From the NCBI RefSeq assembly GCF_003918875.1, contig NW_025765714.1, forward strand, positions 1,302,001 through 1,366,000: 64,000 bases of DNA, given 5' to 3'. The notes below the pieces were generated by a model that saw nothing but the letters and a program-made list of their open reading frames with translations, had not been told where the DNA came from and did no database searches. Within the stretch, counting starts at the first letter, position 1. Each line of letters begins with the position of its first letter. This DNA comes from Haliotis rubra. Taxonomy: Eukaryota. The position numbers and the translations under genes are program-made. This document shows, piece by piece, positions 3,102 to 46,654 of the stretch.

Positions 3102-4884
3102 ACAGTACAACCAGAAATTATTGAGAATTTAAAGATTGTAATTTTTTAATTTTTTTCACTCATTACTCACGTATTAATGTGAATATTAGCAGAACATAAC
3201 TCCAGATTCAAAGACAGGTGAACAGTTAGTATTTTGTCAAGTCACCATGGGCTGCAATGCAGGCTTCAATGCGGTGGGGCATACTACTGATCAAAGAAGT
3301 TAGAAAGTCGTGGTCCATGCTGTCCCAATATCGGACCACCTCTTCTTTCATTTCAGCAATATTTGTCAGATTTTACTTATTGACACTTTCCTTCATAAGT
3401 CCCCAAACATTTTCTATTGGATTAAGGTCAGGGCTATAGCTTGGCCAATCTAATAATGTCATATTTTCGGTCCGAAACCAGGCCTGTGAATACTTTGAAC
3501 AATATTTTGGGTCGTTGTCCTGCTTGAAAATCCAAAAGTTTCCATAGAACACGTGAGCAGATGGAAGTAAATGTCCCTCGAGAATATCTGTGTACCGCTC
3601 ACTGTTCATATTCCCTTCAAATACACAGAGGGGCGTTGCCCCTAACACAGATATGCCACCCCACACATTAAATTTCGGACTGTACTTTGGGTGCTGATAC
3701 AAAGGTTTTTCAGTTTGTTTGGTCCAAAATTTCAGTGTATTAGGGAACAGCCACACAGAACATTCATCTGAGGAAATCACATTGTCCCAGTTAAAATTTC
3801 TATGCTGTAAGCACCAGTTCAATCTTCGTTCCTTTTGTTCAGGTTTCATGATCGGTGATGGAATTCCTTGACTTTCTGCCAACCCATTGCATGCAGCTCA
3901 GTTCTAATTGTCTCCTTACAGACAGCCACAGTTCCTCTATCAATCATATCCAGCCTTAAGTTTTCTAAACTCCTTCGTTTGTTTTTAGAAACAAGAATAC
4001 CAAGCTGCCTCCTGTCACCGACAGTCAATTTTCTGGGCCTACCTGCGCCTCCCTGGTGCTCAATGCCATATCCATTTGCAATATTTTTCAAAACACGATA
4101 AACAGTGCAGAAAGGGATGCCTGTTATACTTGAAATCACTTTAGTTGATCTGATGTCCTTGTTATAATACTCTAAAATCAACTTCCTCTTCTCTAAATCA
4201 TCCATACTGAGGATCACTGAAAATGTCGTCTGCAAGCAAGTAAACAAAGGGGATAACTCTTCACAAACTAATGATAAAGGATTAACGGAGTTGTCTCTCT
4301 TGAATGAAACCAAGCACTTGATAGCTGGTCAAGGTTGTTTATTCTAGAAATCCAATTAAACATATTCCTAAAATTCTCCCGGTAAAAAAGTCCCCTTTTC
4401 ATTTTCTAACAGATATGTATTAGAAAAACAATGCTTTTTTATTTATTCTTTATTCATCGTCATGCATACAACAAATGTAAAGGTCCTATGACATATTGAA
4501 ATGTTGATATAAAGATCATATGAAATGACTACAGTTAACATTAGTTATGAGTTACATAATGAATCATATGATCACACGAGATAGTCTAGGCCTACTGGTA
4601 TCTATGAAGTCAAATGTTAACTGCCACAGTCGTCTGTTCCTTCTGGCACCATTTGATGGTCTTCCAGACAGTGTTTGGTGTACATGTGACCATCTAAGAC
4701 CAGTTTCAAACCACCTTTGTTGGTCAGAGTGACCTCCATCATGGAATGGAATTGGTACTACATGTTTTACCAGGGTACATATTTATACCCAATATGAACA
4801 GATGCCAGTCCACGTAATTAATCTTCTTAATTAATATTCATATTAACAAGAATTAAGATTCTTCAGTATTTTTACTGGTAACTA
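3102..4884 (-). mobile_element. Tc1-family DNA transposon, inactive
   Basis: TA-CAGTacaaccagaaattattgagaat terminus at about 3101-3128, with a degenerate complementary end near 4857-4884 (uncertain). Contains a transposase pseudogene. Confidence 0.75.
3226..4205 (-). pseudogene. Tc1 DD34E transposase pseudogene
   Basis: MDDLEKR... HTH region with GRPRK linker; SDE, QDN and WPSYSPDLNPIE motifs with 34 residues between the second D and E. Frameshift near 3860-3880. In-frame TAA at 3373-3375, after which the Tc1 tail (SMPHRIEACIAAHGDLTKY*) continues. Confidence 0.92.
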
Positions 4885-15350: not shown

Positions 15351-18300
15351 AAAGGCGTTGAGATGGATCTCACCCTTTTATCACGTGACTTGTAAAAGCC
15401 AACGCTCTGGAGAGCTAGAGCTGTAGAGTCCATGCGCACGTCTAGGACAGACCAGCATGAGTGATAGACCCTGTACTTGTAAAGGACTTACTCGTACATG
15501 AAGAAGGGTCGCTTCTCCACTTGATGCGAGCATCAAGACATGGAGTTGCATAAATCCACACATAATGTCAGGAGAAGAGTTGTGGTCCCCCCAGACTCAT
15601 CAGAGGAAGCTGGAAGAGAAAAGGATCAGCACAAGTGCCATCATAAGTTCCCACGGGGGGTATGCAGGACGTAAATCTACAACCGATGAATCCAGAAGTG
15701 GCCTGACCCACCACCGGTTCCATCGGATTCTACAAGCAAAAGAGCATGAGTCAGGATAAGGAAAAATATGTAGTTTTCTGGCTAAAATTGATATTTTATA
15801 CTTATCCTGACTCATTAGGTCATCCCTCCCAACCTCCCCTCTGGACACTCTGGATTTCCCGGTAATCTGAGAGTCGGGCTCATATACGGAGAGAGTGACA
15901 AGCATGGCTGGTCAGATGACCAATAAGGGCGCCAAAGGGCAAAGGGAGGCTACTCATGGGGTGAGTGATTTTACGTCCGCTTTTTTTAAGGGAGCTTCAA
16001 AAGGGGATTCAAGTGTTCCACTATCATTCGCAAGAAGAAGGAGACAAGCAAAAGAGCATGAGTCAGGATAAGTATAAAATATCAATTTTAGCCAGAAAAT
16101 TAATTTACATGTATATACTGAACGGATAATTCTACCTGCGCGTCCTGCGTAATATACGCATGAAATTTTGGAAGGACACACAAATATCTTGTGCATCCTG
16201 TGGATGCATACATATTCACCAATCATGTTTATAAATAAATAAACTGCAAGGGTTGAAATTAACGGACGCTAATACAAATTACAATAGTAATAAAGGACGA
16301 CTTTTTTGGCGTCTCACAGTGTTGCATCCAGGCTGCGCAATTGCACTATTCCCCGCGTACTTCGCCCTAAAAAAAATGAAAATCGATGTGACCTGTCACG
16401 CAATATAAATGACCACGTAACTATCATATTGTGTCAACACACGCACCTGCGTAACATGTGTGGAGTCAGGACGCATATATGCATCGCAAATCAAAAGCGT
16501 CTTTGGTAAATATATAAACAAGACTGCAAATCATGTTGATAAACTCTTCTGTTTGTTAAACCAGCCCGGTTTCATCATTCTATTTTCATGACAAATACCC
16601 AAAGCGGTTTCTTGACCTATATCTATTTTAGGTTTTGCATATATTAATGTATGGTATAGTCCGTAGGTTTACTTCAGGCAGTCAGGTGCTGCATATTAAA
16701 GCTTGGTGACGTTCGTAATTTCTTTAGACTGATGATTGATCGAAAACATCACGACCTCGTGTCCAACTAAAACTAGTCTGTCACACCAAGGGTATACTTC
16801 AGAACGGGGTGACCCGAACAATACACCGAAGTGTTATTACATAACATTAGTTATGATTATTAATATTTTACATTGATAGAGCAGAATCTGCAATTAGAAT
16901 TACACAATGCTAGAATATATTTCTCTTGATAAAATAACAGTTTCCGAACTGCATCAGAATTCATATTGAAAATCACTGGTAAATCGTGGGGGACGTGTGC
17001 ACAGCTGATTGCGATTTCCGGCTCTGTAATCGAGACAAATACACACGGTAATCTTAATCCCTGCATATAATACAATGCAAAGCAAAAACAAATTGGAACT
17101 GAAATGGTAAACAATCGTGTCTAGTGATGTTTAATTGCAAATTTACTGTCTTTACTGACAAAGTTGTCTTCTCTTGTTCGTTCACTCAAACCGATATGTA
17201 ATGTCGTTTTCTTACTCCCTGAAAAAAGGTTTCACGAAAGTGTAGCCCGTAGATAAGCCTACCCCCTTCTACAATCAAAATTGACTGGCCCAGATCTTAG
17301 GAATTTCCCTGTTGCAGCAAAGAAAGACGTTTATTTCACAAGTGTTTACCATTAGTTAAGGTTGTGAAAACTATAGGTTATTGGTTTTGGAATTACTTTT
17401 ATGTTTTTGCTTCTTGAAATTTCATTTAGTTCTAACCCTGATTAACAACAATGCTTTAAAATTGTTTTTTAACAATGAAATCTAGACATTGGTAAATGCA
17501 GTTCAGCGACAAACAAGTGGAAAACCCTGCTTGGCTTTGATTATTTGATCATTTCTTCTTCTGAAGTTTAAGGGACTCACAAAAATTTCAAAAGGACTTG
17601 TTACTTTTCAACAGTGAGTCCCAGGACTTACACACTAAAAATTGTAGATTTATCACTGAGACTGTTAAAAATGTAGAATGAGAAGTCACTAAATGCTGTT
17701 GAAGTTGAAAAAACCTAATTGCATATCCCTGAATTCTTTAGAAATGTGCCAACTTTTCTGAATGTTGAAGTTATTGTCACAATGACATCTCACATAATTT
17801 TTAACTGACTGAAAGTAGTATTTTATACAGTGAAAGATGAAAGTGCCATAATAATTGTTTTCAAAACGACACTGGCTTTAAATTGAGGCATTAAACGTCA
17901 AGCATGATATTTAAGCAGTTATGCAACCAATGTTAGCTTTTTAAAGTGTAATAATTTGCTTTTAATGGAAGCCGAATGGAAATTGTTTTATCCTGTATAT
18001 TCATGCTTGATTGCTCTACAATTCCCAGATTGTGTTTCCTCCATGCATCTTATACCTGACATGTGAGGTGGTTTATCAGGACTGTCTACTGATGTTTTAT
18101 CCTGTATATTAATGCTGGATTGCTCTGTAATTCATATTGATAATCTGGTCTCTAAAATTGATAATCCACTGTTGTCACATTTTTCTTGTCCATATTATAT
18201 TGATGTTCAAACAGGCCATAGTGAAGTGGAATTGAGCAAGCAAAGCTTGTGGGCTCAAATTCAATCGAATTAGTAGACTAACATATGGAATGAAAATAAA

Positions 18301-22553: not shown

Positions 22554-23684
22554 CACTGGTGGCGGATAAACAGTTAGAACCATGGCAAAGGAAACCCCCA
22601 GCAAGTCTCCCTGGTGATGGGAACTATGATGATATGGGCTATGGCAGTGACATACAGATCCCTGACTTACCACAGGGAGACTACTCCAGGACAGACCTAG
22701 AGAAGGAGCTGAGTGACGGCAAGGAAGTGAGTCAGGGAGTCTACACTAAGGATGCTGATCGTACTGACAAACTTGCTGATACTGTCAACAATGCATACAG
22801 CAATACCAGGGGAAAGGTGCATGATTATGAGTACTCATCGGATGTGGATAAAGAACTAGAAAGAGTGAGCATATCTGAAACTGACCGGCCCTTGGTGAAG
22901 CCTACGTTCCTCCCATCAAAGCCAGAGGTATCATGGTACAGAGATGAAGTGTTGCCCGAGGGTCAGAGGAATGAGGACAAGCAGAAGAGTGATTCAGATG
23001 TTGCCAGTAAGAGGGTTCACAGGGTCGACACAACTGTTGAGGAAAGTGCAGATAGACCTCCAGCGAGTTCAGGAATGAAAACTCCAAAGCATGATCTACA
23101 TGCAACTCCAGTTGGTCGTCCTGAAGCAAGACCTCGACCCCCTCAAAGAGCCAAGCCTGAGATTACTCACTCTCCCCAAAAGACAAGCTTGCCTAAAGCT
23201 CAGCCAAGTGAAATGTATCCCAAGCCCAGCAGTCAGGACTCAGCATTCCAGACACTAGCCCCTGATGCCCCGTCAGAAGGAGATGACAGACTCATGGACA
23301 ACAAGCCTGCCTCTAACATGGGCTACAGACCAGCATTTAACAGACAGTATCCACCACATGGTTTGAACAGACAACCCCCAAGGACCCAGGCAATAAACCC
23401 CAATATTCCCGCTCCAGACTATGACACCAATCTGTATGGGCTGGGTCAGCAACGCCCTTACCCCATAAGGAGGCCATTCCAACAAGGTCATCCTAATGGC
23501 CCGTATCGGAAGTTCCCTGATACTGGTTTCAACCATGCATACACAGGTGGCTACAACAACTATGACTACAATGACTTTGATCCCTATGTCCCTCTCCAAG
23601 GCAAAGACTACAGCAATCCTGACACCCACAGAACTTATGGCAGCCAGGGCAAAGCGAACTACCCTTATAAGTCATATGGTGGAG
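22554..23684 (+). CDS. LRP11: LRP11-like exon 5: long low-complexity extracellular stalk (D/E-, then P-, then Y/G/N/P-rich)
   Basis: Acceptor ttttgttag| in the frame of the 430-aa ORF; donor GAG|gtact at 23684 keeps phase 1. The 3' boundary is less certain. Confidence 0.8.
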
Positions 23685-25069: not shown

Positions 25070-26135
25070 ATGTGTGTTTCATATGAGAACCTACAAGAAG
25101 ACAATAAGCAGGTTTCATTTGAGAATGTGTTCGGAGGTGAAATGTGTGTTTCATGTGAGAATGTACCCGAAGGCAACAACCATGTGTCATGTGAGAATGT
25201 ACCAGAAGGCAACAACCATATGTCATGTGAGAATGTACCAGAAGGTGACAACCATGTTTCATGTGAGAATGTGCCCGAAGGTGACAACCATGTTTCATGT
25301 GAGAATGTGCCCGAAGGTGACAACCATGTTTCATGTGAGAATGTGCCAGAAGGCTACAACCATGTTTCATGTGAGAATGTGCCAGAAGGCAACAACCATG
25401 TTTTATGTGAGAATGTGCCAGAAGGCAACGACCATGTTTCATGTGAGAATGTGCCTAAAGGTGACAACCATGTTTCATGTGAGAATGTGCCTAAAGGTGA
25501 CAACCATGTTTCATGTGAGAATGTACCAGAAGGCAACAACCATGTTTCATGTGAGAATGTGCCTAAAGGTGACAACCATGTTTCATGTGAGAATGTACCA
25601 GAAGGCAACAACCATGTTTCATGTGAGAATGTACCAGAAGGCAACGACCATGTTTCATGTGAGAATGTGCCCGAATGTGACAACCATGTTCCAAGTGAGA
25701 ATGTGCCCAAAGGTGACAACCATGTTTCATGTGAGAATGTGCCGGAAGGCGACAACCATGTTTCGTGAGAATGTGCCCGAAGGTGACAACAATGTTTCAT
25801 GTGAGAATGTACTAGAAGGCGACAACCATGTTTCATGTTAGAATGTGCCCGAAGGCAACAACCATGTTTCATGTGAGAATGTACCAGAAGGCGACAACCA
25901 TGTTTCATGTGAGAATGTACCAAAAGGCAACAACCATGTTTCATGTGAGAATGTACCAAAAGGCAACAACCATGTTTCATGTGAGAATGTACCAAAAGGC
26001 AACAACCATGTTTCATGTGAGAATGTACCAGAAGGCAACAACCATGTTTCATGTGAGAATGTACCAGAAGGCAAGAGTTCTTTTTGTTTGAGGGTATCCT
26101 GGTTAGGTGAGATTTGTGTGAATGTGAGAACATGC
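25070..26135 (+). repeat. 36-bp minisatellite (LRP11-like intron 5), about 26 good copies plus decayed edges
   Basis: Unit tcatgtgagaatgtaccagaaggcaacaaccatgtt. Confidence 0.95.
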
Positions 26136-29959: not shown

Positions 29960-30698
29960 GGGGGCTATTTTAAGCATTTTATTGAGCAAATATGTACAAA
30001 ACTGTTACAAAACAAGCACAAAAATGGAGCTGGACAGTTTGCTCTAATCAGCTGAGGTTGGTAACAGTCCACTATAGCCTTTGCAAAGAACAGGAAATTG
30101 ACCAGTTAGGTTTTAGGTCTAGTAGCAGCATCAGCAACAGTGAGTGGTGTTCAGAGATGATATAAATAACTGCCCATTTAGACAATACTATATACTACAG
30201 ACTATTATCAAGAGATTGACTTCTCAATTGATATTCTTTTACTCCATTGTGATCCAAACATTTCAATGATTAAGAAAACATTTGAAACTGAAAAGAGGGC
30301 TTGGTGCTAAACTTTCCATTTTGAAATGTGAGTCACCTTTATATATTATGACAACAGTGACAGACTACCTGTGCAAATGACACCATTCCAGCTGACAGCT
30401 GCATGAAATATACACCCCTCTCCGGCAGTCAGCGACATATATATACACTTGGCATAGTGACATATGTACACCTGGACACATCACCTGTTTCTCACCGAAA
30501 CACACAAGGTTGGAAGTGAAGGGTTCAGAGCAGACCAACAGTTACCTTGGCACGTCTATTGAAGTTGCCAGAAGAGATCTGATATAGTGGAGCAGGCTAC
30601 TAGCCTGGTTCCTACATTTGTGGTCTGCCTGCACTACGGACAGGGTGCTTGGGTTGGGGATGATCAGCATAAAGAGGACTTAACTGTCCCACTCTCAC
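29960..30698 (-). other. PCMT1: Candidate PCMT1 terminal exon (G-TGA then 3' UTR)
   Basis: Acceptor ttttgtgtacag|GTGA at 30698; minus-strand AATAAA at 29978-29983. The 3' end is approximate. Confidence 0.55.
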
Positions 30699-31103
30699 CT
30701 GTACACAAAATATAACATGAAATATGCTGAAGTGCACTGCAGGTCTACACTAAGATAAAGAACAAAACTATACAATGTATCTTTCACTGTAACAAGTAAT
30801 AAGCTCAGTGTGGTACATGTATCAGAATTAATGTTAACCGTAAAACGTAACTCGGGGGGGGGGAACAGTGGTTAAAACAAATCAACACAATTACAGTCAG
30901 GTGAGAAACATTGTTTCAGCTGGCATGTAGCTCTACAGTTGCCGTGGTGACTACTGTATGGTAAGACCACACTGACTTTAGTGCCGACCTCATCACATCA
31001 AGGTCAAGGCTGTCAGATAAGCATGAAGGTCAGCAAGATTAGACAGTTGGAGACTATCACTGAAACTCGAACTGCGGTCATGGGCATGGCTCCTTGTACT
31101 CAC

Positions 31104-31118
31104 AGCTCTGGCTTGGGT
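31104..31118 (-). CDS. PCMT1: Candidate 15-nt alternative microexon of PCMT1 giving C-terminus RPKPEL
   Basis: cttatgtttcag|ACCCAAGCCAGAGCT|gtgagt, phase-compatible with the AG|gtggag donor at 35779. Confidence 0.6.
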
Positions 31119-32867
31119 CTGAAACATAAGATACAGAAGGTATAGTCTGGGGTTGGCCACTACATCGGTTGTTGATAGTCTCCATACTGCTAAACAGAAA
31201 CAGTTCATTCCAGTTTCTGCAAATAACAAATCCTCAGTTATCCAGTGCCCATCTCCAGCATGATAATACCCTGACTCCTGGGCCCATTTCAGATGCAACA
31301 TCACTCCATCTCTCTCAGTGTATTCAATTCAATTTCTTTTATTCCCACAAACCACCCTCGGTTGTACAGAAACATTTTACAGTATGAATATATAATATGT
31401 AACGTGATCAGTTGGGTAAATAAAAATATTACGCTTTGACGGTTTCATTCACAATCCGTATTGGCTTGAAGTTGAGAACTATCTACAGAGCCACTTCTTA
31501 ACATTAGATCATCAAATATGGACATTCAAAATTGTAGGAGAGAGCTCCCGATGTAGAATTGAATCAGAATATGAGCGGTTCAAAATATAGGGAAGGAAAG
31601 TTCTTATGCTTCCATTTTCAGTATGTAACCATATGCAACAAGGCAACATGGGTCTGGGGATGTTGCTGCCTGTTGCCATCATGGAAGAAAGGTGTAATTT
31701 GATTCCACAGATATTATTGAGCATTTGTGTCTTGCAGGGTATTTATCATACTAAAATGGTGACATGTTAGATAAACAAAAATACAGTCTACGACAAAGTG
31801 GTGTTTTCTTTCAAGATGTAGTTAAAGTATCTTCCCTAAATTAGTTTTCACTTTGATTATTGGGAATGACAACTGAGATACTTCGAAAAACAGTTACACC
31901 ACTGTGTTAGACAGTAAGTTTCTGCAAGTGGCAACTAGATCGTACCTACTAGAGCTCCCCTTACAACAGACAGCACTGACTGTACCTACACAAAAAGACA
32001 ACAGACCTTGCATCAGTCAAAGCTCAACCACAAAACTACAACATGCAAAGTTGGTTGGAGTTGTCTCCCTTCAGGTATTCATTGTAAGGCATGTCTTATG
32101 TATGCAGCAGGGCAAAGAGGCTATGTACAGCGCCAGCTTTTCACCACTATATTTTAGTGAACAACTTGTACAACAAAGAAATAGAATAATCTGCAATGAT
32201 TATTATCTTCAGTACTTCAGTATCAGGAAAACCATTTGACATCATTCAAAACTATCTGTTACACATTCAGCATCACACCAACCTATGTATTGATTGGGTT
32301 TTACATGTGTGGCACCAATCTTCACAATACCAACATAGGTCTTGATTGGATTTTACATAAAACCAACATATACATGTGGACTATTTTTTTTCACGTGTGA
32401 CACCAATTTTCACAATACCAACCTTATGTTTTACACATAACCACAATCTGTATCAATCAGTTGTGATTCTGTTTGTCTTTAGGCACATTTCACAAACAAA
32501 TATTGAACACTTCAAGCCAACCTTAGATTTATCCTAAGTTCCATATTCACAACTATTAAAACAATTTTGATAAAAATAGGTCAGTGTTATGTTTTGTTAT
32601 TTAAAACACCATCACCAATACAAAGCTGTTACACTGAAGCCCAGTGTTCTAGACTGATTTGGTACAATGTACTTACACTGGCACATATACAGACATAATG
32701 GACTTCCTAGACTGCCAAATAACAGACCCTATGTTCTGACTCTATTCACTGAGGGGCACCAGCTATTCCAGCACCACCTGACAAATGACGGGGAGACCTT
32801 ACACAATCACCACCTGACACTGAAGGGAAAACACCTGTGATGTGTGCCCCTATACATGCACCTGTGC

Positions 32868-34129
32868 CAGGGGCGTAGCTCCCATTATAGAAAAAAGCCC
32901 GGGCTTACACATGATTTTTGCTAAAATATTTTGTTTCTAATTCTGCCAAATACGTTATCAGAACAATTAAAAAAAATAGTAGTCCCTCCATGAATCATAT
33001 TGACTACAATATTCTTTGATAACAAAGCATTATCAATACAGTAACAAACCGAAACATGAGTCTCATTAACCTATTCAGACAATGACCTACTTTTCAGCCA
33101 ATCCGATTTTTTCTCGTGTGAAAGTGAAAATAGACAACTATGGTTACACTGAATTCCAATTCCTTGTTTCATAAGAAAATACTATGTACAGATGAATTTT
33201 AATTTTAAACTTTAATAACATCGTATTTCTACATTTTATGGCGATGTGTAGGCAGCATGGCCTTAACCAAGACGTCACAGACTGCCCCCAGTTTGATGAG
33301 GTCGTAAAATGATTCACAAAGCATCTGGCTCACTGGTTACACCTGTTATGTGTTTTTTTGCGCTTTTTCAGTGTAGTTCTGTAACGCACAATGTGATTGA
33401 TATAATATCAAGTCCGTACCAGACTGCCAAACTTTTCTAGCGACAGAGCCTCGTTTTGAGATTGCCAGGTTTCTGTTTGTTAGTGCTCGCTGTATGACAG
33501 AGCACGCTGCACGACATGTTTGCAAGGATTATAAGGAGCATAGTGGTGCAATATACAAGTGCTTAGATGTATCAAATAATACTGATTAATATTTATGTAT
33601 CCAGTTGAATGAATTGGTCTCAAAATTCTGGGCTGGTTATTGTACTAAGTTGCACAATAGGACGGAACACTGTGAACAGGAAACGAGACTGTTGTGTAAT
33701 CAATGTTTTGACTTGCATGTTATTCTTCGGGGCGGTGGGGTAGCCTAGTGGTTAAAGCATTCTCTCGTCACGCTTCAAAGGACCGGGTTTCGATTCCCCA
33801 CATGGGTACAATGTGTGAAGCCCATTTCTGGTGTCCTCCGCCGTGATATTGCTGGAATATTGCTAAAAACGGCGTAAAACCATACTCAGTCAGTCAGTCA
33901 GTGTCATTCTTCGTATATAAATTTGAAGTGTTTTTCTTTCAGTGATGATTGTTTTTCCATCGACATGTATGTGAATGTTTTGCTACAGTCGTAATTATAT
34001 GTGAATCATAACTGAAATGCAGGTATGTACAACGAAAACGTAAGCGTTACTTCATTCTGTAGTCATTCTGAGGGCTTTTAGGTGCAACCTATCAGGCTTA
34101 CACAAAAAAATTGGCTTGCTACGCGCCTG
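32868..34129. mobile_element. Non-autonomous DNA transposon with CAGG-CGTAGC TIRs and 5-bp TSD
   Basis: caggggcgtagc ... gctacgcgcctg, flanked by tgtgc on both sides; contains a nested SINE. Confidence 0.7.
33729..33903 (+). mobile_element. SINE family A
   Basis: Full length, with TSD tgttattcttcg / tgtcattcttcg. Confidence 0.9.
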
Positions 34130-34299
34130 TGTGCCACTGTGATTTATGCCCCAATGCAAGTACTTGTGCTGTGTTTTTTCTGATCTGTGCTGTGGGCAAT
34201 GAAGAAAGGAACTTGCTCATCAAGACAATCTGATGTTGCCGTTTACCTGCCTTGAAGCAAAACTTGGGAACTCACAATTTTTATGCTGTGTTAACAGAA

Positions 34300-35765
34300 G
34301 CAAGCAACGGTGCTGTGTGCCCCAAGTTAGTATGCTGTGTTACCCTAACCAAGCACCTGTGCTGTGTGCCCCAAGTTAGTATGCTGTTACCCTAAGCAAG
34401 CACCTGTGCTGTGTGCCCGAGGTTAGTATGCTGTGTTACCCTAAGCAAGCACCTGTGCTGTGTGCCCCAAGTTAGTAAGCTGTGTTACCCTAACAAAGCA
34501 CCTGTGCTGTGTGCCCCAAGTTAGTAAGCTATGTTACCCTAACCAAGCACCTGTGCCGTGTGCCCCAAGTTAGTATGTTGTGTTACCCTAACCAAGCACC
34601 TGCGCTGTGTGCACCAAGTTAGTATGCTGTGTTACCAGAAGCATGCACCTGTGCTGTGTGCCCCAAGTTAGTATGCTGTTAGTCACAATATGGCTGAAAT
34701 ATTGCCAATGTGACTTAAAACCTTAACTCACTCACTCACTAGTATGCTGTTACCCTAATCAAGCACCTGTGCTGTGTGCCCGAAGTTAGTATGCTGTTAC
34801 CCTAAGCAAGCACCTGTGCTGTGTGCCAAAAAGGTTAGTATGCTGTGTTACCAGAAGCAAGCACCTGTGCTGTGTGCCCAAAGTTAGTATGCTGTTACCC
34901 TAAGCAAGCACCTGTGCTGTGTGCCCCAAGTTAGTATGCTGTTACCCTAAGCAAGCACCTGTGCTGTGTGCCCAAGGTTAGTATGCTGTTATCCTAAGCA
35001 AGCACCTGTACTGTGTGCCCGAGGTTAGTATGCTGTGTTACCCTAACCAAGCACCTGTGCTGTGTGCCCGAAGTTAGTATGCTGTTACCCTAAGCAAGCA
35101 CCTGTGCTGTGTGCCCGAAGTTAGTATGTGCTGTTACCCTAAGCAAGCACCTGTACTGTGTGCCCGAGGTTAGTATGCTGTTACCCTAAGCAAGCACCTG
35201 TGCTGTGTACCCGAAGTTAGTATGCTGTTACCCTAAGCAAGCACCTGTGCTGTGTGCCCCAAGTTAGTATGCTATGTTACTCTAACCAAGCACCTGTGCT
35301 GTGTGCCCCAAGTTAGTAAGCTATGTTACCCTAACCAAGCACCTGTGCTGTGTGCCCGAGGTTAGTATGCTGTGTTACCCTAAGCAAGCACCTGTGCTGT
35401 GTGCCCCAAGGTTAGTATGCTGTGTTACCCTAACCAAGCACCTGTGCTGTGTGCCCGAGGTTAGTATGCTGTGTTACCCTAAGCAAGCACCTGTGCTGTG
35501 TGCCCGAGGTTAGTATGCTATGTTACCCTAAGCATGCACCTGTGCTGTGTGCCCGAAGTTAGTATGCTGTTACCCTAAGCAAGCACCTGTGCTGTGTGCC
35601 CGAGGTTTGTATGCTGTGTTACCCTAAGCATGCACCTGTGCTGTGTGGCCCATGCTAGTAAGCTGTGTTACCAGAAGCATGCACCTGTGCTGTGTGCACC
35701 ATGCTGGTATGCTACATTTCCCTCAGCAAGCACCTGTGCTGTGTGCCCCATGCTAGTACATGCTG
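34300..35765 (+). repeat. 41-44-bp minisatellite abutting the PCMT1 stop codon
   Basis: Unit aagcacctgtgctgtgtgccccaagttagtatgc(tg)tgttaccctaagc; interrupted by a SINE tail at about 34682-34740. Confidence 0.95.
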
Positions 35766-35768
35766 CTA

Positions 35769-35948
35769 CTATCTCCACCTGGGCCACTGCTTGTCCTTGC
35801 TGGTCAGCGGCACATAGATGACTCCCATCAGGTTCTTCCTGACCACCTGGCCATCAAGGGTCTTGTCAATCTGCATCAGCTTCTGGTTCTCTCCTTGACC
35901 TCCAACTGGGATGATCAGCCGTCCTCCTGGTTTCAGCTGATCCACCAA
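35769..35948 (-). CDS. PCMT1: PCMT1 exon 5 (motif III; C-terminus WPRWR*, or internal donor at 35779)
   Basis: ttgcag| [16 protein letters not shown]...[20 protein letters not shown]. The five exons sum to 690 nt (229 aa + stop). Confidence 0.95.
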
Positions 35949-36789: not shown

Positions 36790-37002
36790 CGCCTGGGGCA
36801 GCTCCGGGGCTGCAGCTCCCACATGTATAGCATCAAAGGGTGCATCCTCCTCATAGCCTAGTCTGCCATCACCCAGAACAAGTTTCAGCTGACCTCTATC
36901 CAGAAGTTTCCCCAGGCTCTTGTCCTTCCTGACATTGGTGGTAGCCATCTGGATAAGCTCATCGATGTGGTCAATACCCACAGCCACACCCTTCTCCCCC
37001 AC
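36790..37002 (-). CDS. PCMT1: PCMT1 exon 4 (motif II)
   Basis: ctgtag| [16 protein letters not shown]...[28 protein letters not shown] |gtgagt; 213 nt. Confidence 0.95.
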
Positions 37003-40055: not shown

Positions 40056-40160
40056 CATAAGTGCCATGCAAGCTGTGAGGTAGCCACTGCCTGATCCCAC
40101 GTCCAGGGCACGCCCACCCTCCTTCAGGTTCTCCGACAGCAGCTCCAGGGCATGTGCATG
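40056..40160 (-). CDS. PCMT1: PCMT1 exon 3 (SAM-binding motif I)
   Basis: ccag| [35 protein letters not shown] |gtaggc; 105 nt. Confidence 0.95.
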
Positions 40161-41149: not shown

Positions 41150-41286
41150 CATGTGGGGTGCACTAATTGTTACAGCGTATCCTATACTCTGGGGCGAGTC
41201 ATTGTACGGGTTGAACTTGCAGAAGTGTACTCGATCTACAGCCTTCATGACTTGAACAACTTGTGGAGATTTGATTATGCCATTCG
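41150..41286 (-). CDS. PCMT1: PCMT1 exon 2
   Basis: tttcag| [45 protein letters not shown] |gtaagt; PIMT pre-I motif TISAPHM. Confidence 0.95.
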
Positions 41287-45760: not shown

Positions 45761-45815
45761 CATGCAAGTTGTCTACGAGGTTGGAATTGCTGGTACCGCT
45801 CGATCTCCACGCCAT
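45761..45815 (-). CDS. PCMT1: PCMT1 exon 1 from the canonical ATG (in-frame upstream ATG at 45890)
   Basis: MAWRSSGTSNSNLVDNLH, the typical PIMT N-terminus; donor G|gtaagc; 55 nt. Confidence 0.93.
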
Positions 45816-46654
45816 TGTTGACCGGGGCACCACAGCAAAGACGAAAGTCACTGAACTTAAAACGACAGCTTTCAGTCTGTCCCAAAACATCACATATCCC
45901 AATGATTCCAGCTAATGGCCATCGCCATTACTCGGCGAAACTACAAAATACAAGAAAAGCATTGCTCATGTAGTTACTATAATTTGAAAGTTTAGTTAAT
46001 AATGTACTGCTTGCAACTGTTGTCAAATTGCCATTGGTATATTTGATGACGCTTACGCGTTTAAACTGACACGCGCACTCACAGACCAGCCCCCATTACT
46101 GACCTTGACCGCCGACGATGACCTTCACCTTTGGGCGACAGGTGCTCATCATTCACGAATGGACGATAAAAGCATACCGCTACATTGACGTACATTCAAA
46201 AGACGCACACTCTTGTAGGTTGGAATTTCGGAGACCATTTATCAAGGAAATAATACGCTTCGAGTAGAAAATATCTCGTGACCTTTGCCGCACGGATAAC
46301 GTAAAAATAAACTGCCCCTATGTCTGTGTATAACATGAGCTATGGAGCCTCTATAAATATCTGTAAGGAAAATATTTTGCCTTCCTTTACGGAGCCAAGA
46401 TCAATTTATATAAAATTTCCTTCTCCTGAAAAAGAATGTTTACCGTTCATCTTTTTTCAACAGATATTCGGGTTGATCACAAATTATCGCTTTTTCCATA
46501 AGCATTAAAGTAACATGGATCACAAAATCAGTCAATCTAACATTGAAGAACCAGACGTAGCATAGCTTGAACTGATTTGATGAACAGACAAGTTTCATAT
46601 ATAAATGTGAAATACATATCCAGTAGGTGTTTTAATCTATAAAAAATAATAGTG

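What the first reader, a model, noticed from the sequence alone, without database searches (positions are those of the whole stretch)
30695..35779. 15-nt microexon toggles three PCMT1 C-termini, with a fail-safe stop
Reading through the donor at 35779 gives WPRWR* (229 aa), parallel to human -RWK. Splicing to 31118-31104 and then 30698 gives WPRPKPEL* (232 aa). Skipping the microexon gives WPR* (227 aa). If the microexon donor is not used, CT|GTGA still reads L-stop, identical to the spliced CT|G TGA, so both routes yield KPEL*. Strong splice sites on both sides and exact phase fit argue against chance. Microexons of this size are often neural-regulated (general knowledge).
Basis: partly seen in the sequence, partly recalled or inferred. 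Interest (0 to 1): 0.75.

Follow-up and report, generated by a model that had tools for sequence, protein, structure and literature searches.

The report
Abalone PCMT alternative tail exons

Summary
The window is Haliotis rubra (blacklip abalone) DNA, with a PCMT (protein-L-isoaspartate O-methyltransferase) gene on the minus strand.

**What holds**
- Every coordinate and reading frame in the finding is correct.
- The -RWR and -RPKPEL ends are real. They match RefSeq isoforms X3 and X2 exactly, and the same isoforms are annotated in three other abalone species.
- The PKPEL codons differ between species only at synonymous positions.
- Other animals carry KDEL-like tails at the same place.

**What does not hold**
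- In all four species the annotated coding span stops at the TGA directly after the 15-mer (31100), not at 30695.
- Four-species identity stays at 63-67% from 31118, through the proposed intron, to a conserved AATAAA at 29983. It then falls to 21%. This is the pattern of one continuous last exon of about 1.17 kb.
- The 30698 acceptor and the -R-only product are no better than chance.
- The "fail-safe stop" is simply the exon's stop codon.

The third annotated end is -RYSQCCLL, from an exon at 31985. Its CCLL box is the same as RalB's lipid-anchor signal. Tails with Cys at position -4 recur in PCMT isoforms of insects, crustaceans, ticks, snails and an acorn worm.

The parts
45761..45890 (-). 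First coding exon. The upstream ATG at 45890 gives a 25-aa hydrophobic extension (MFWDRLKAVVLSSVTFVFAVVPRST). The conserved MAW start is at 45815. The donor is ATG|GTAAGC.
   Evidence: identical to the N-terminus of RefSeq H. rubra isoforms
41150..41286 (-). Coding exon 2 (A-NGIIKSPQ...ISAPHM)
   Evidence: Pfam PF01135, E 4.4e-13; boundaries
40056..40160 (-). Coding exon 3 (HAHALELL...DVGSGSG...ALM). It holds the AdoMet-binding glycine motif.
   Evidence: Pfam PF01135, E 5.2e-12. The boundary was inferred by fitting the RefSeq protein ...LMVGEKG....
36790..37002 (-). Coding exon 4 ([12 protein letters not shown]...AAAPELPQA)
   Evidence: Pfam PF01135, E 4.2e-19; donor GCG|GTGAGT
35779..35948 (-). 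Last common coding exon (LVDQLKPGG...KDKQWP + AG of the Arg codon). It ends at a weak donor, CAG|GTGGAG.
35769..35778 (-). Read-through tail G TGG AGA TAG, giving -RWR* (RefSeq isoform X3, 254 aa)
   Evidence: P0413. The same RW[KRH]-stop follows this donor in Elysia, Lottia, Patella, Aplysia, oysters and vertebrates.
34282..35748 (.). Tandem repeat arrays of 49/96 nt that begin 31 nt after the donor. A read-through (X3) 3'UTR would run into them.
31961..31985 (-). CCLL is a CaaX-type box.
   Evidence: Conserved in four Haliotis species (YGQCCLL in H. asinina).
31100..31118 (-). Coding start of the distal last exon: A CCC AAG CCA GAG CTG TGA, giving -RPKPEL* (RefSeq isoform X2, 257 aa).
   Evidence: Only synonymous changes occur (AAG/AAA, CCA/CCG) across four species. 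The annotated coding span ends at 31100.
29960..31099 (-). Inferred continuous 3'UTR of the distal last exon.
   Evidence: Four-species identity is 0.67 (31099-30699) and 0.63 (30698-29960). This compares with 0.37 in the upstream intron and 0.21 past the poly(A) signal.
29978..29983 (-). Poly(A) signal AATAAA (ATTAAA in one species). Conservation collapses about 30 nt downstream of it.

Best explanation
This is the 3' end of the Haliotis rubra PCMT gene. It makes three alternative C-termini by ordinary use of alternative last exons, not by a toggling microexon.

After the last common exon (ending at 35779 in the AG of an Arg codon) there are three routes:
1. The weak donor CAG|GTGGAG is not used, and translation reads on to -RWR*. 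This is the counterpart of vertebrate isozyme I, -RWK.
2. The donor is spliced to an exon at 31985, giving -RYSQCCLL*.
3. The donor is spliced to a last exon starting at 31118, giving -RPKPEL*. This exon runs on unspliced for about 1.17 kb to a conserved AATAAA at 29983.

The GTGAGT after it is the Leu-stop codons plus two bases. The AG|GTGA at 30698 lies inside the 3'UTR.

PKPEL is the abalone version of the KDEL-like tail found at this position in PCMT of many animals (vertebrate isozyme II, -RDEL).

Shown here: the sequences, the RefSeq isoforms, their conservation, and where the coding span ends. Inferred: that the 3'UTR is continuous, and any role of the tails in localisation.
For: - The window is identical to H. 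rubra GCA_003918875.1 contig QXJH01000174.1 (54 of 54 sampled 50-mers).
- RefSeq isoforms X1 -RYSQCCLL, X2 -RPKPEL and X3 -RWR exist for H. rubra, and the same three tail types for three other Haliotis genomes.
- The recorded coding span of the gene runs from the ATG at 45890 to exactly 31100, the TGA contiguous with the PKPEL codons. The same holds in H. asinina and in the two other Haliotis assemblies. A 31104-to-30698 splice would have put the end at 30695.
- Four-way identity is 0.89 over the 19 coding nt, 0.67 over 31099-30699 and 0.63 over 30698-29960. It is 0.37 in the upstream intron and 0.21 past the conserved AATAAA.
- The PKPEL codons differ only synonymously between species.
- Homologous tails occur after the same Arg: NKFDL (Elysia marginata, as one contiguous exon with no GT after the stop), NKYDL, KKFEL, SKAEF, SKDEL, RHRDDL and others. 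In all, 88 of 247 full-length PCMTs collected end in [DE][LFI].
- Vertebrate -RWK/-RDEL splicing is documented (PMC9146343 and PMC7859441, both citing MacLaren 1992).
Against: - No RNA reads were available, so transcript structure rests on RefSeq computational models and on conservation.
- The GTGAGT after the 15-mer and the ACAG|GTGA at 30698 are both invariant in the four abalone species. An optional 405-nt 3'UTR intron is therefore not excluded.
- The look-up tool reports a coding span per gene, not exon lists. I take that span to be the union of all isoforms' coding parts, because it extends beyond the stop of X1, the longest product.
- The four species are close relatives, so high conservation of a UTR-sized block is suggestive rather than decisive.
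Confidence: 0.75

Rival explanations
1. 31118-31104 is a true internal 15-nt cassette microexon spliced on to 30698. Including it gives -RPKPEL, skipping it gives -R, and the in-frame stop in the donor is a safeguard.
For: - All sites fit arithmetically.
- GTGAGT and ACAG|GTGA are invariant in four abalones, and the sequence just after GTGA at 30694 varies by insertions and deletions.
- -R-only isoforms are annotated in other snails (Physella acuta X2, Bradybaena).
- Only 3 microexon-like patterns occur in 128 kb.
Against: - No annotated coding span in four independently annotated species reaches 30695.
- No -R isoform is annotated in any abalone.
- There is no conservation dip in the supposed intron.
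- The exon side of the donor is GCT, and given CTG-TGA the GTGAGT costs only 1/16.
- 29 AG|N-stop sites lie in 9.8 kb.
- The Elysia homologue has no donor after its stop.
- Spliced or unspliced, the protein is the same, so a 'fail-safe' is not needed to explain the stop.
Confidence: 0.1
2. A silent 3'UTR intron. 31118 starts the last coding exon as in the main reading, but a fraction of X2 transcripts also remove 31103-30699. This changes only the 3'UTR, since the protein is still -RPKPEL. No -R isoform is made.
For: Both splice-site cores are conserved in four species. H. asinina lists three transcript accessions for the same X2 protein, so UTR variants exist.
Against: Such a transcript would place the stop codon at 30697-30695 and extend the coding span, which is not seen in any of the four species. 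The three accessions could equally differ in their 5'UTRs.
Confidence: 0.12
3. The PKPEL tail is an annotation artefact: a chance acceptor picked up by gene prediction, with no real transcript.
For: RefSeq XP_ models are computational, and I could not inspect the RNA support behind them.
Against: The tail has the same five residues in four species with only synonymous changes. Homologous x-K-x-[DE]-[LF] tails of the same length follow the same Arg in other gastropods. It has the best pyrimidine tract of the gene's acceptors (16/20). A conserved 3'UTR and poly(A) signal follow it.
Confidence: 0.03

Closest known systems
Vertebrate PCMT1 isozymes I (-RWK) and II (-RDEL), made by alternative splicing at the last common exon (MacLaren, Kagan & Clarke 1992 and Potter et al. 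1992, as cited in PMC7859441 and PMC9146343)
   Same: The last common exon ends in the AG of an Arg codon. Reading through the donor gives R-W-K/R-stop. Splicing to a downstream exon gives a short tail ending in -EL. Vertebrate genomic and transcript fragments show the same ...KQWSRWK and ...KQWSRDEL ends.
   Different: The abalone tail is -PKPEL (five residues, Pro at -3) instead of -DEL. Abalone also has a third annotated tail, -RYSQCCLL, with no mammalian counterpart that I know of.
RefSeq models for Haliotis rubra PCMT-like isoforms X1/X2/X3 (XP_046564109.1, XP_046564111.1, XP_046564112.1)
   Same: These are the products of this very locus: -RYSQCCLL, -RPKPEL and -RWR.
   Different: They are automatic predictions.
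KDEL-type ER retrieval signals (PROSITE [KRHQSA]-[DENQ]-E-L; Raykhel et al. 2007, PMC2140024)
   Same: The C-terminal K-x-E-L is paired with a hydrophobic, signal-like N-terminal extension. Orthologous tails in other animals are canonical (-KDEL, -HDEL, -RDEL, -KEDL).
   Different: Pro at -3 is the one residue that failed to give ER localisation in the human AKxEL reporter series. KPEL therefore fails the motif as tested in mammalian cells.
CaaX geranylgeranylation box of RalB (CCLL) and Rac2 (CSLL), table in PMC7674641
   Same: The X1 tail ends in exactly CCLL. The prawn PCMT isoform ends in CCSLL.
   Different: Prenylation of any PCMT isoform is untested. I found no paper linking PCMT to CaaX.

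Membership tests
PCMT / PIMT protein-L-isoaspartate O-methyltransferase (Pfam PF01135) | PF01135 domain match above the gathering score | tested here: met
   Four exon translations each hit PF01135 (57, 69.6, 46.4 and 49.9 bits against a cut-off of 20.3). Together they cover profile positions 11-209 of 210. The last common exon aligns to human PIMT 1I1N residues 168-222, E 5.4e-19.
PCMT / PIMT protein-L-isoaspartate O-methyltransferase (Pfam PF01135) | AdoMet-binding glycine-rich motif (DVGSGSG) | tested here: met
   [14 protein letters not shown] is present in exon 3.
PCMT alternative C-terminus system (isozyme I / II type) | The last common exon ends in a split Arg codon, and read-through gives R-W-[KR]-stop | tested here: met
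   CCC AG|G TGG AGA TAG at 35779; RefSeq X3 ends in -RWR.
PCMT alternative C-terminus system (isozyme I / II type) | A downstream exon supplies a short tail ending in [DE]-L | tested here: met
   The exon at 31118 gives -RPKPEL. This is RefSeq X2 in four Haliotis species.
PCMT alternative C-terminus system (isozyme I / II type) | Both mRNA forms observed in RNA | not testable with these tools
No Logan transcript contigs were found for ORFs in the 3'UTR.
Internal cassette microexon (30 nt or less) | Short length that keeps the reading frame, flanked by AG and GT | tested here: met
   15 nt, ttcag|...|gtgagt.
Internal cassette microexon (30 nt or less) | The downstream donor is actually used, so the piece is internal and not the start of a last exon | tested here: not met
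   The annotated coding span ends at the contiguous TGA (31100) in four species. The supposed downstream intron is conserved like the 3'UTR (0.67 against 0.63), up to a conserved AATAAA. This is indirect evidence, since no RNA reads were available.
Internal cassette microexon (30 nt or less) | The skipping product exists | tested here: not met
   No -R-only isoform is among the 10 abalone cluster members. The 30698 acceptor is at chance level.
KDEL-type ER retrieval signal | C-terminal tetrapeptide fits [KRHQSA]-[DENQ]-E-L or an experimentally accepted variant | tested here: not met
   KPEL has Pro at -3, the one residue reported not to work at that position in human cells (PMC2140024).
KDEL-type ER retrieval signal | An N-terminal signal sequence to enter the ER | tested here: inconclusive
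   A 25-aa hydrophobic extension begins at the upstream ATG at 45890. It is present in the RefSeq models and in 71 of 88 [DE][LFI]-ending homologues. No signal-peptide predictor was available, and which start codon is used is unknown.
CaaX prenylation box (for the X1 tail) | Cys at -4 followed by aaX, with X = L for geranylgeranylation | tested here: met
   -CCLL is identical to the RalB box. Cys at -4 occurs in 15 of 247 PCMT tails, against 1-7 at other tail positions.
CaaX prenylation box (for the X1 tail) | The protein is actually prenylated | not testable with these tools
   This needs a biochemical assay.

The most novel reading that the evidence does not exclude
PCMT's alternative last exons may be an ancient three-way address switch rather than the two-way switch known from mammals. 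The three forms would be a cytosolic read-through form (-RW[KR]), an ER form (hydrophobic N-extension plus a KDEL-like tail, here -KPEL), and a lipid-anchored form with a CaaX box (here -CCLL, the RalB box).

Tails with Cys at -4 sit beside KDEL-like or read-through tails in isoform sets of abalone (CCLL), prawn (CCSLL), cricket (CCAAS), termite (CCVVA), leafhopper (CEIC), tick (CNTL), butterfly (CNIN), Pomacea (CTPV), Littorina (CTAW) and an acorn worm (CQVL). I found no paper describing a prenylated PCMT.
Probability: 0.35. Interest if true: 0.6.

Novelty: already known. Interest (0 to 1): 0.22.

Why it matters
As submitted, the finding matters little. The real part, alternative PCMT C-termini, is a textbook feature of the vertebrate enzyme and is already in RefSeq for this abalone. 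The new part, a toggling microexon with a fail-safe stop, is probably a misreading of a last exon.

Two things are worth keeping:
- The -RW[KR] read-through and the KDEL-like spliced tail are conserved from molluscs to humans. The long-debated ER form of this repair enzyme is therefore ancient and probably functional, even though abalone's KPEL breaks the mammalian rule at position -3.
- A third, CaaX-like tail class recurs across protostomes and a hemichordate. If these tails are really prenylated, they would place a protein-repair methyltransferase on membranes. This appears to be undescribed and is easy to test.

Tried and rejected
- **Transcript contigs by another route.** Exact look-ups of two small ORFs inside the putative 3'UTR (30368-30538 and 30545-30670) found nothing on record.
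- **More distant genomic loci.** L002 and L004/L005 (unnamed ENA assemblies) showed no [DE]L tail candidate within 10 kb. They were uninformative without annotation.
- **First full-length query.** The representative I picked (P0079) turned out to be a beetle protein, so that search returned mostly arthropods. Molluscs were reached only with alignment A1, made of an annelid protein plus the window's exons as separate rows.
- **No joined model was searched.** Exons were always given singly by reference.
- **Alternative DEL-type exon.** I considered that a different exon might be hidden in the intron. The scan found only the 31118 site.
- **30698 as a donor.** CAG|GTGAGA at 30698 also looks like a donor. 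I did not pursue this.
- **Assembly gaps and human DNA.** The window contains no N runs. I took no contig for human.
Full report
**1. What is at the coordinates**

All features lie on the minus strand.
- The last common exon ends ...AAG CAG TGG CCC AG at 35779 and is followed by GTGGAGATAG. Reading through gives QWPRWR*.
- At 31118-31104 lies ACCCAAGCCAGAGCT. It is preceded by ccttctgtatcttatgtttcag (16/20 pyrimidines) and followed by GTGAGT.
- Joined to the AG of 35779, this reads R-P-K-P-E-L. The Leu is completed and the stop supplied by G TGA, whether those bases come from the adjacent GTGA or from the GTGA after acag| at 30698.
- Joining 35779 directly to 30698 reads R-stop.
- The window has no N runs.

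**2. What gene and what genome**

- Four stop-free stretches upstream each match Pfam PF01135 (PCMT) well above threshold. Together they cover almost the whole profile.
- The last common exon aligns to human PIMT structure 1I1N, residues 168-222.
- Exon 1 has the conserved MAWRSSG start at 45815. It also has an in-frame upstream ATG at 45890, which adds 25 hydrophobic residues.
- The word search with single exons reached only fragments, and none was a full-length relative. I then used the one representative search, followed by a profile search. The profile was made from an annelid PCMT plus the window's five exons as separate rows (A1).
- The best match was a cluster of Haliotis RefSeq proteins, 218/225 identical over the exons.
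- The genomic locus of the H. rubra protein (GCA_003918875.1, contig QXJH01000174.1) is identical to the window in 54 of 54 sampled 50-mers. The window is blacklip abalone.

**3. The C-termini that are annotated**

The cluster holds three isoform types, found in H. rubra, in H. asinina and in two further Haliotis assemblies. From memory I believe those two are H. rufescens and H. cracherodii; their names were cut off in the output.

| Isoform | Length | C-terminus | Status in the finding |
|---|---|---|---|
| X2 | 257 aa | ...QWPRPKPEL | confirmed |
| X3 | 254 aa | ...QWPRWR | confirmed |

- All three start at the upstream ATG.
- The -R-only form is absent from the cluster.
- The X1 tail is encoded at 31985-31961, tttttgtgtag|G TAC AGT CAG TGC TGT CTG TTG TAA. 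It lies 867 nt upstream of the PKPEL piece and is conserved in all four species.

**4. Microexon or last exon?**

This is the heart of the finding, and three lines of evidence point to a last exon.
- **Annotated coding span.** The span recorded for the gene runs from 45890 to exactly 31100, the A of the TGA contiguous with ...GAGCTG. The same is true in all four species. A 31104-to-30698 splice would end the coding span at 30695. The recorded span extends past the stop of X1, the longest product, so I take it as the union of all isoforms' coding parts.
- **Conservation.** In a four-species alignment the fraction of invariant columns is as follows:

| Segment | Invariant fraction |
|---|---|
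| Intron upstream of 31118 | 0.37 |
| 19 coding bases (31118-31100) | 0.89 |
| 30698-29960 | 0.63 |
| Beyond 29950 | 0.21 |

  The drop follows a conserved CTCAATAAA at 29983. This is the profile of one continuous exon of about 1.17 kb with its poly(A) signal, not of a microexon followed by an intron.
- **A sea-slug homologue.** In Elysia marginata the annotated homologous tail (G AAC AAG TTC GAC TTA TGA, giving NKFDL) has no GT after its stop.

**5. Chance estimates**

- The acceptor plus tail is well above chance. It is the only AG followed by a tail of 12 residues or fewer ending in xEL in the 15.8 kb downstream. It is also one of three microexon-like patterns in 128 kb.
- The donor adds little. 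Once Leu(CTG)-stop(TGA) is there, GTGAGT needs only GT next (1/16), and the exon side is GCT rather than MAG.
- AG|N-stop sites number 29 in 9.8 kb, and three of them have a pyrimidine tract as good as the one at 30698.
- Against my reading, GTGAGT and ACAG|GTGA are both invariant in the four abalones. An optional, protein-neutral 3'UTR intron therefore cannot be excluded without RNA.

**6. RNA evidence**

- Exact look-ups of two small ORFs in the putative 3'UTR, tried as a way to pull transcript contigs, found nothing.
- Transcript structure therefore rests on RefSeq models and on conservation.

**7. What the tails are like**

- **Read-through tail.** R-W-[KRH]-stop follows the same donor in sea slugs, limpets, a chiton, oysters and vertebrates. 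It matches the documented human isozyme I, -RWK.
- **KDEL-like tail.**
  - The spliced tail after the same Arg ends in [DE][LFI] in 88 of 247 full-length PCMTs collected.
  - Examples are -SKDEL and -SSSKDEL (bivalves), -RHDEL (a nemertean), -RHRDDL (a tubeworm), and -KKFEL, -NKYDL and -SKAEF (gastropods).
  - PKPEL has the same length and the same x-K-x-E-L shape as the gastropod tails, and its codons change only synonymously among abalones. It is therefore the abalone member of the isozyme II (-RDEL) class.
  - The ER-retrieval role is inferred, not shown. Raykhel et al. found that every residue except proline works at -3 in a human reporter (PMC2140024), so KPEL fails the motif as tested in mammals. 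KPEL occurs only in Haliotis in my set.
- **CaaX-like tail.**
  - The X1 tail ends in CCLL, the geranylgeranylation box of RalB (PMC7674641).
  - Cys sits at -4 in 15 of 247 PCMT tails, against 1-7 at neighbouring positions.
  - Isoform sets of a prawn (-RWRY / -RREL / -RCCSLL), a cricket (-RNEL / -RCCAAS), a termite (-RNEL / ...RCCVVA), a leafhopper (-RSEL / -SCEIC), a tick (-RWR / ...SGEL / -SCNTL), Pomacea (-RWH / ...HDDL / -RCTPV), Littorina and an acorn worm (-RCQVL / ...HEEF) show the same classes side by side.
  - I found no paper linking PCMT to CaaX.
  - This is a side observation. It rests mainly on automatic gene models.

**8. Verdict**

- The gene does switch C-termini, and -RWR and -RPKPEL are genuine. 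The switch is most likely among alternative last exons: read-through, the exon at 31985, and the exon at 31118.
- The "microexon", its skipping product and its "fail-safe stop" are not supported.
- The real part is already in RefSeq and belongs to a long-known vertebrate phenomenon, so novelty is low.
- The most interesting residue is the recurrent CaaX-like third tail.

Noticed in passing
window 31961-31985 (-); also P0286, P0246, P0277, P0250, P0467, P0408, P0335, P0345: A third PCMT C-terminus, -RYSQCCLL, ends in the RalB-type CaaX box CCLL. Tails with Cys at -4 (CCSLL, CCAAS, CCVVA, CEIC, CNTL, CNIN, CQVL, CTPV, CTAW) recur as alternative PCMT isoforms in prawn, cricket, termite, leafhopper, tick, butterfly, acorn worm and snails. 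No paper on a prenylated PCMT was found.
   Followed up: partly
window 45816-45890 (-): An in-frame upstream ATG adds a 25-aa hydrophobic, signal-like extension (MFWDRLKAVVLSSVTFVFAVVPRST) before the conserved MAW start. Comparable hydrophobic extensions precede MAW in most annotated invertebrate and fish PCMTs (71 of 88 with KDEL-like tails). A short upstream ORF (ATGGCGATGGCC...TGA) lies just before it, at about 45890-45930.
   Followed up: partly
window 34282-35748: Large tandem-repeat arrays (period 49/96 nt, about 8 and about 21 copies, about 90% matches) start 31 nt after the donor of the last common exon. They lie in what would be the 3'UTR of the read-through (-RWR) transcript. No canonical AATAAA/ATTAAA occurs on the minus strand between 35779 and 33217.
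   Followed up: no
window 25147-26074: A 36-nt minisatellite of 25.8 copies with 91% matches. It lies between PCMT and the neighbouring gene, or at that gene's edge.
   Followed up: no
window below about 27012 (+ strand); L006:24879-26791: The neighbouring convergent gene encodes a 919-aa protein with MANEC and LDL-receptor class A domains. The same neighbour is present in all four Haliotis loci.
   Followed up: no
window 3849-4328 (-): A 160-aa ORF looks like the N-terminal DNA-binding part of a Tc1/mariner-type transposase. I judged this by eye only.
   Followed up: no
P0270 (Lamellibrachia satsuma PCMT model): The annotated tubeworm protein contains the last common exon twice in tandem (LVDQLVPGGRL...TSK followed by [11 protein letters not shown]...). 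This suggests either duplicated, possibly mutually exclusive exons or a model error.
   Followed up: no
window 22671-22696 and 17632-17661 (-): These are the only two other microexon-like patterns in the window (good pyrimidine tract, AG, 30 nt or less, GTRAGT). They were not examined.
   Followed up: no
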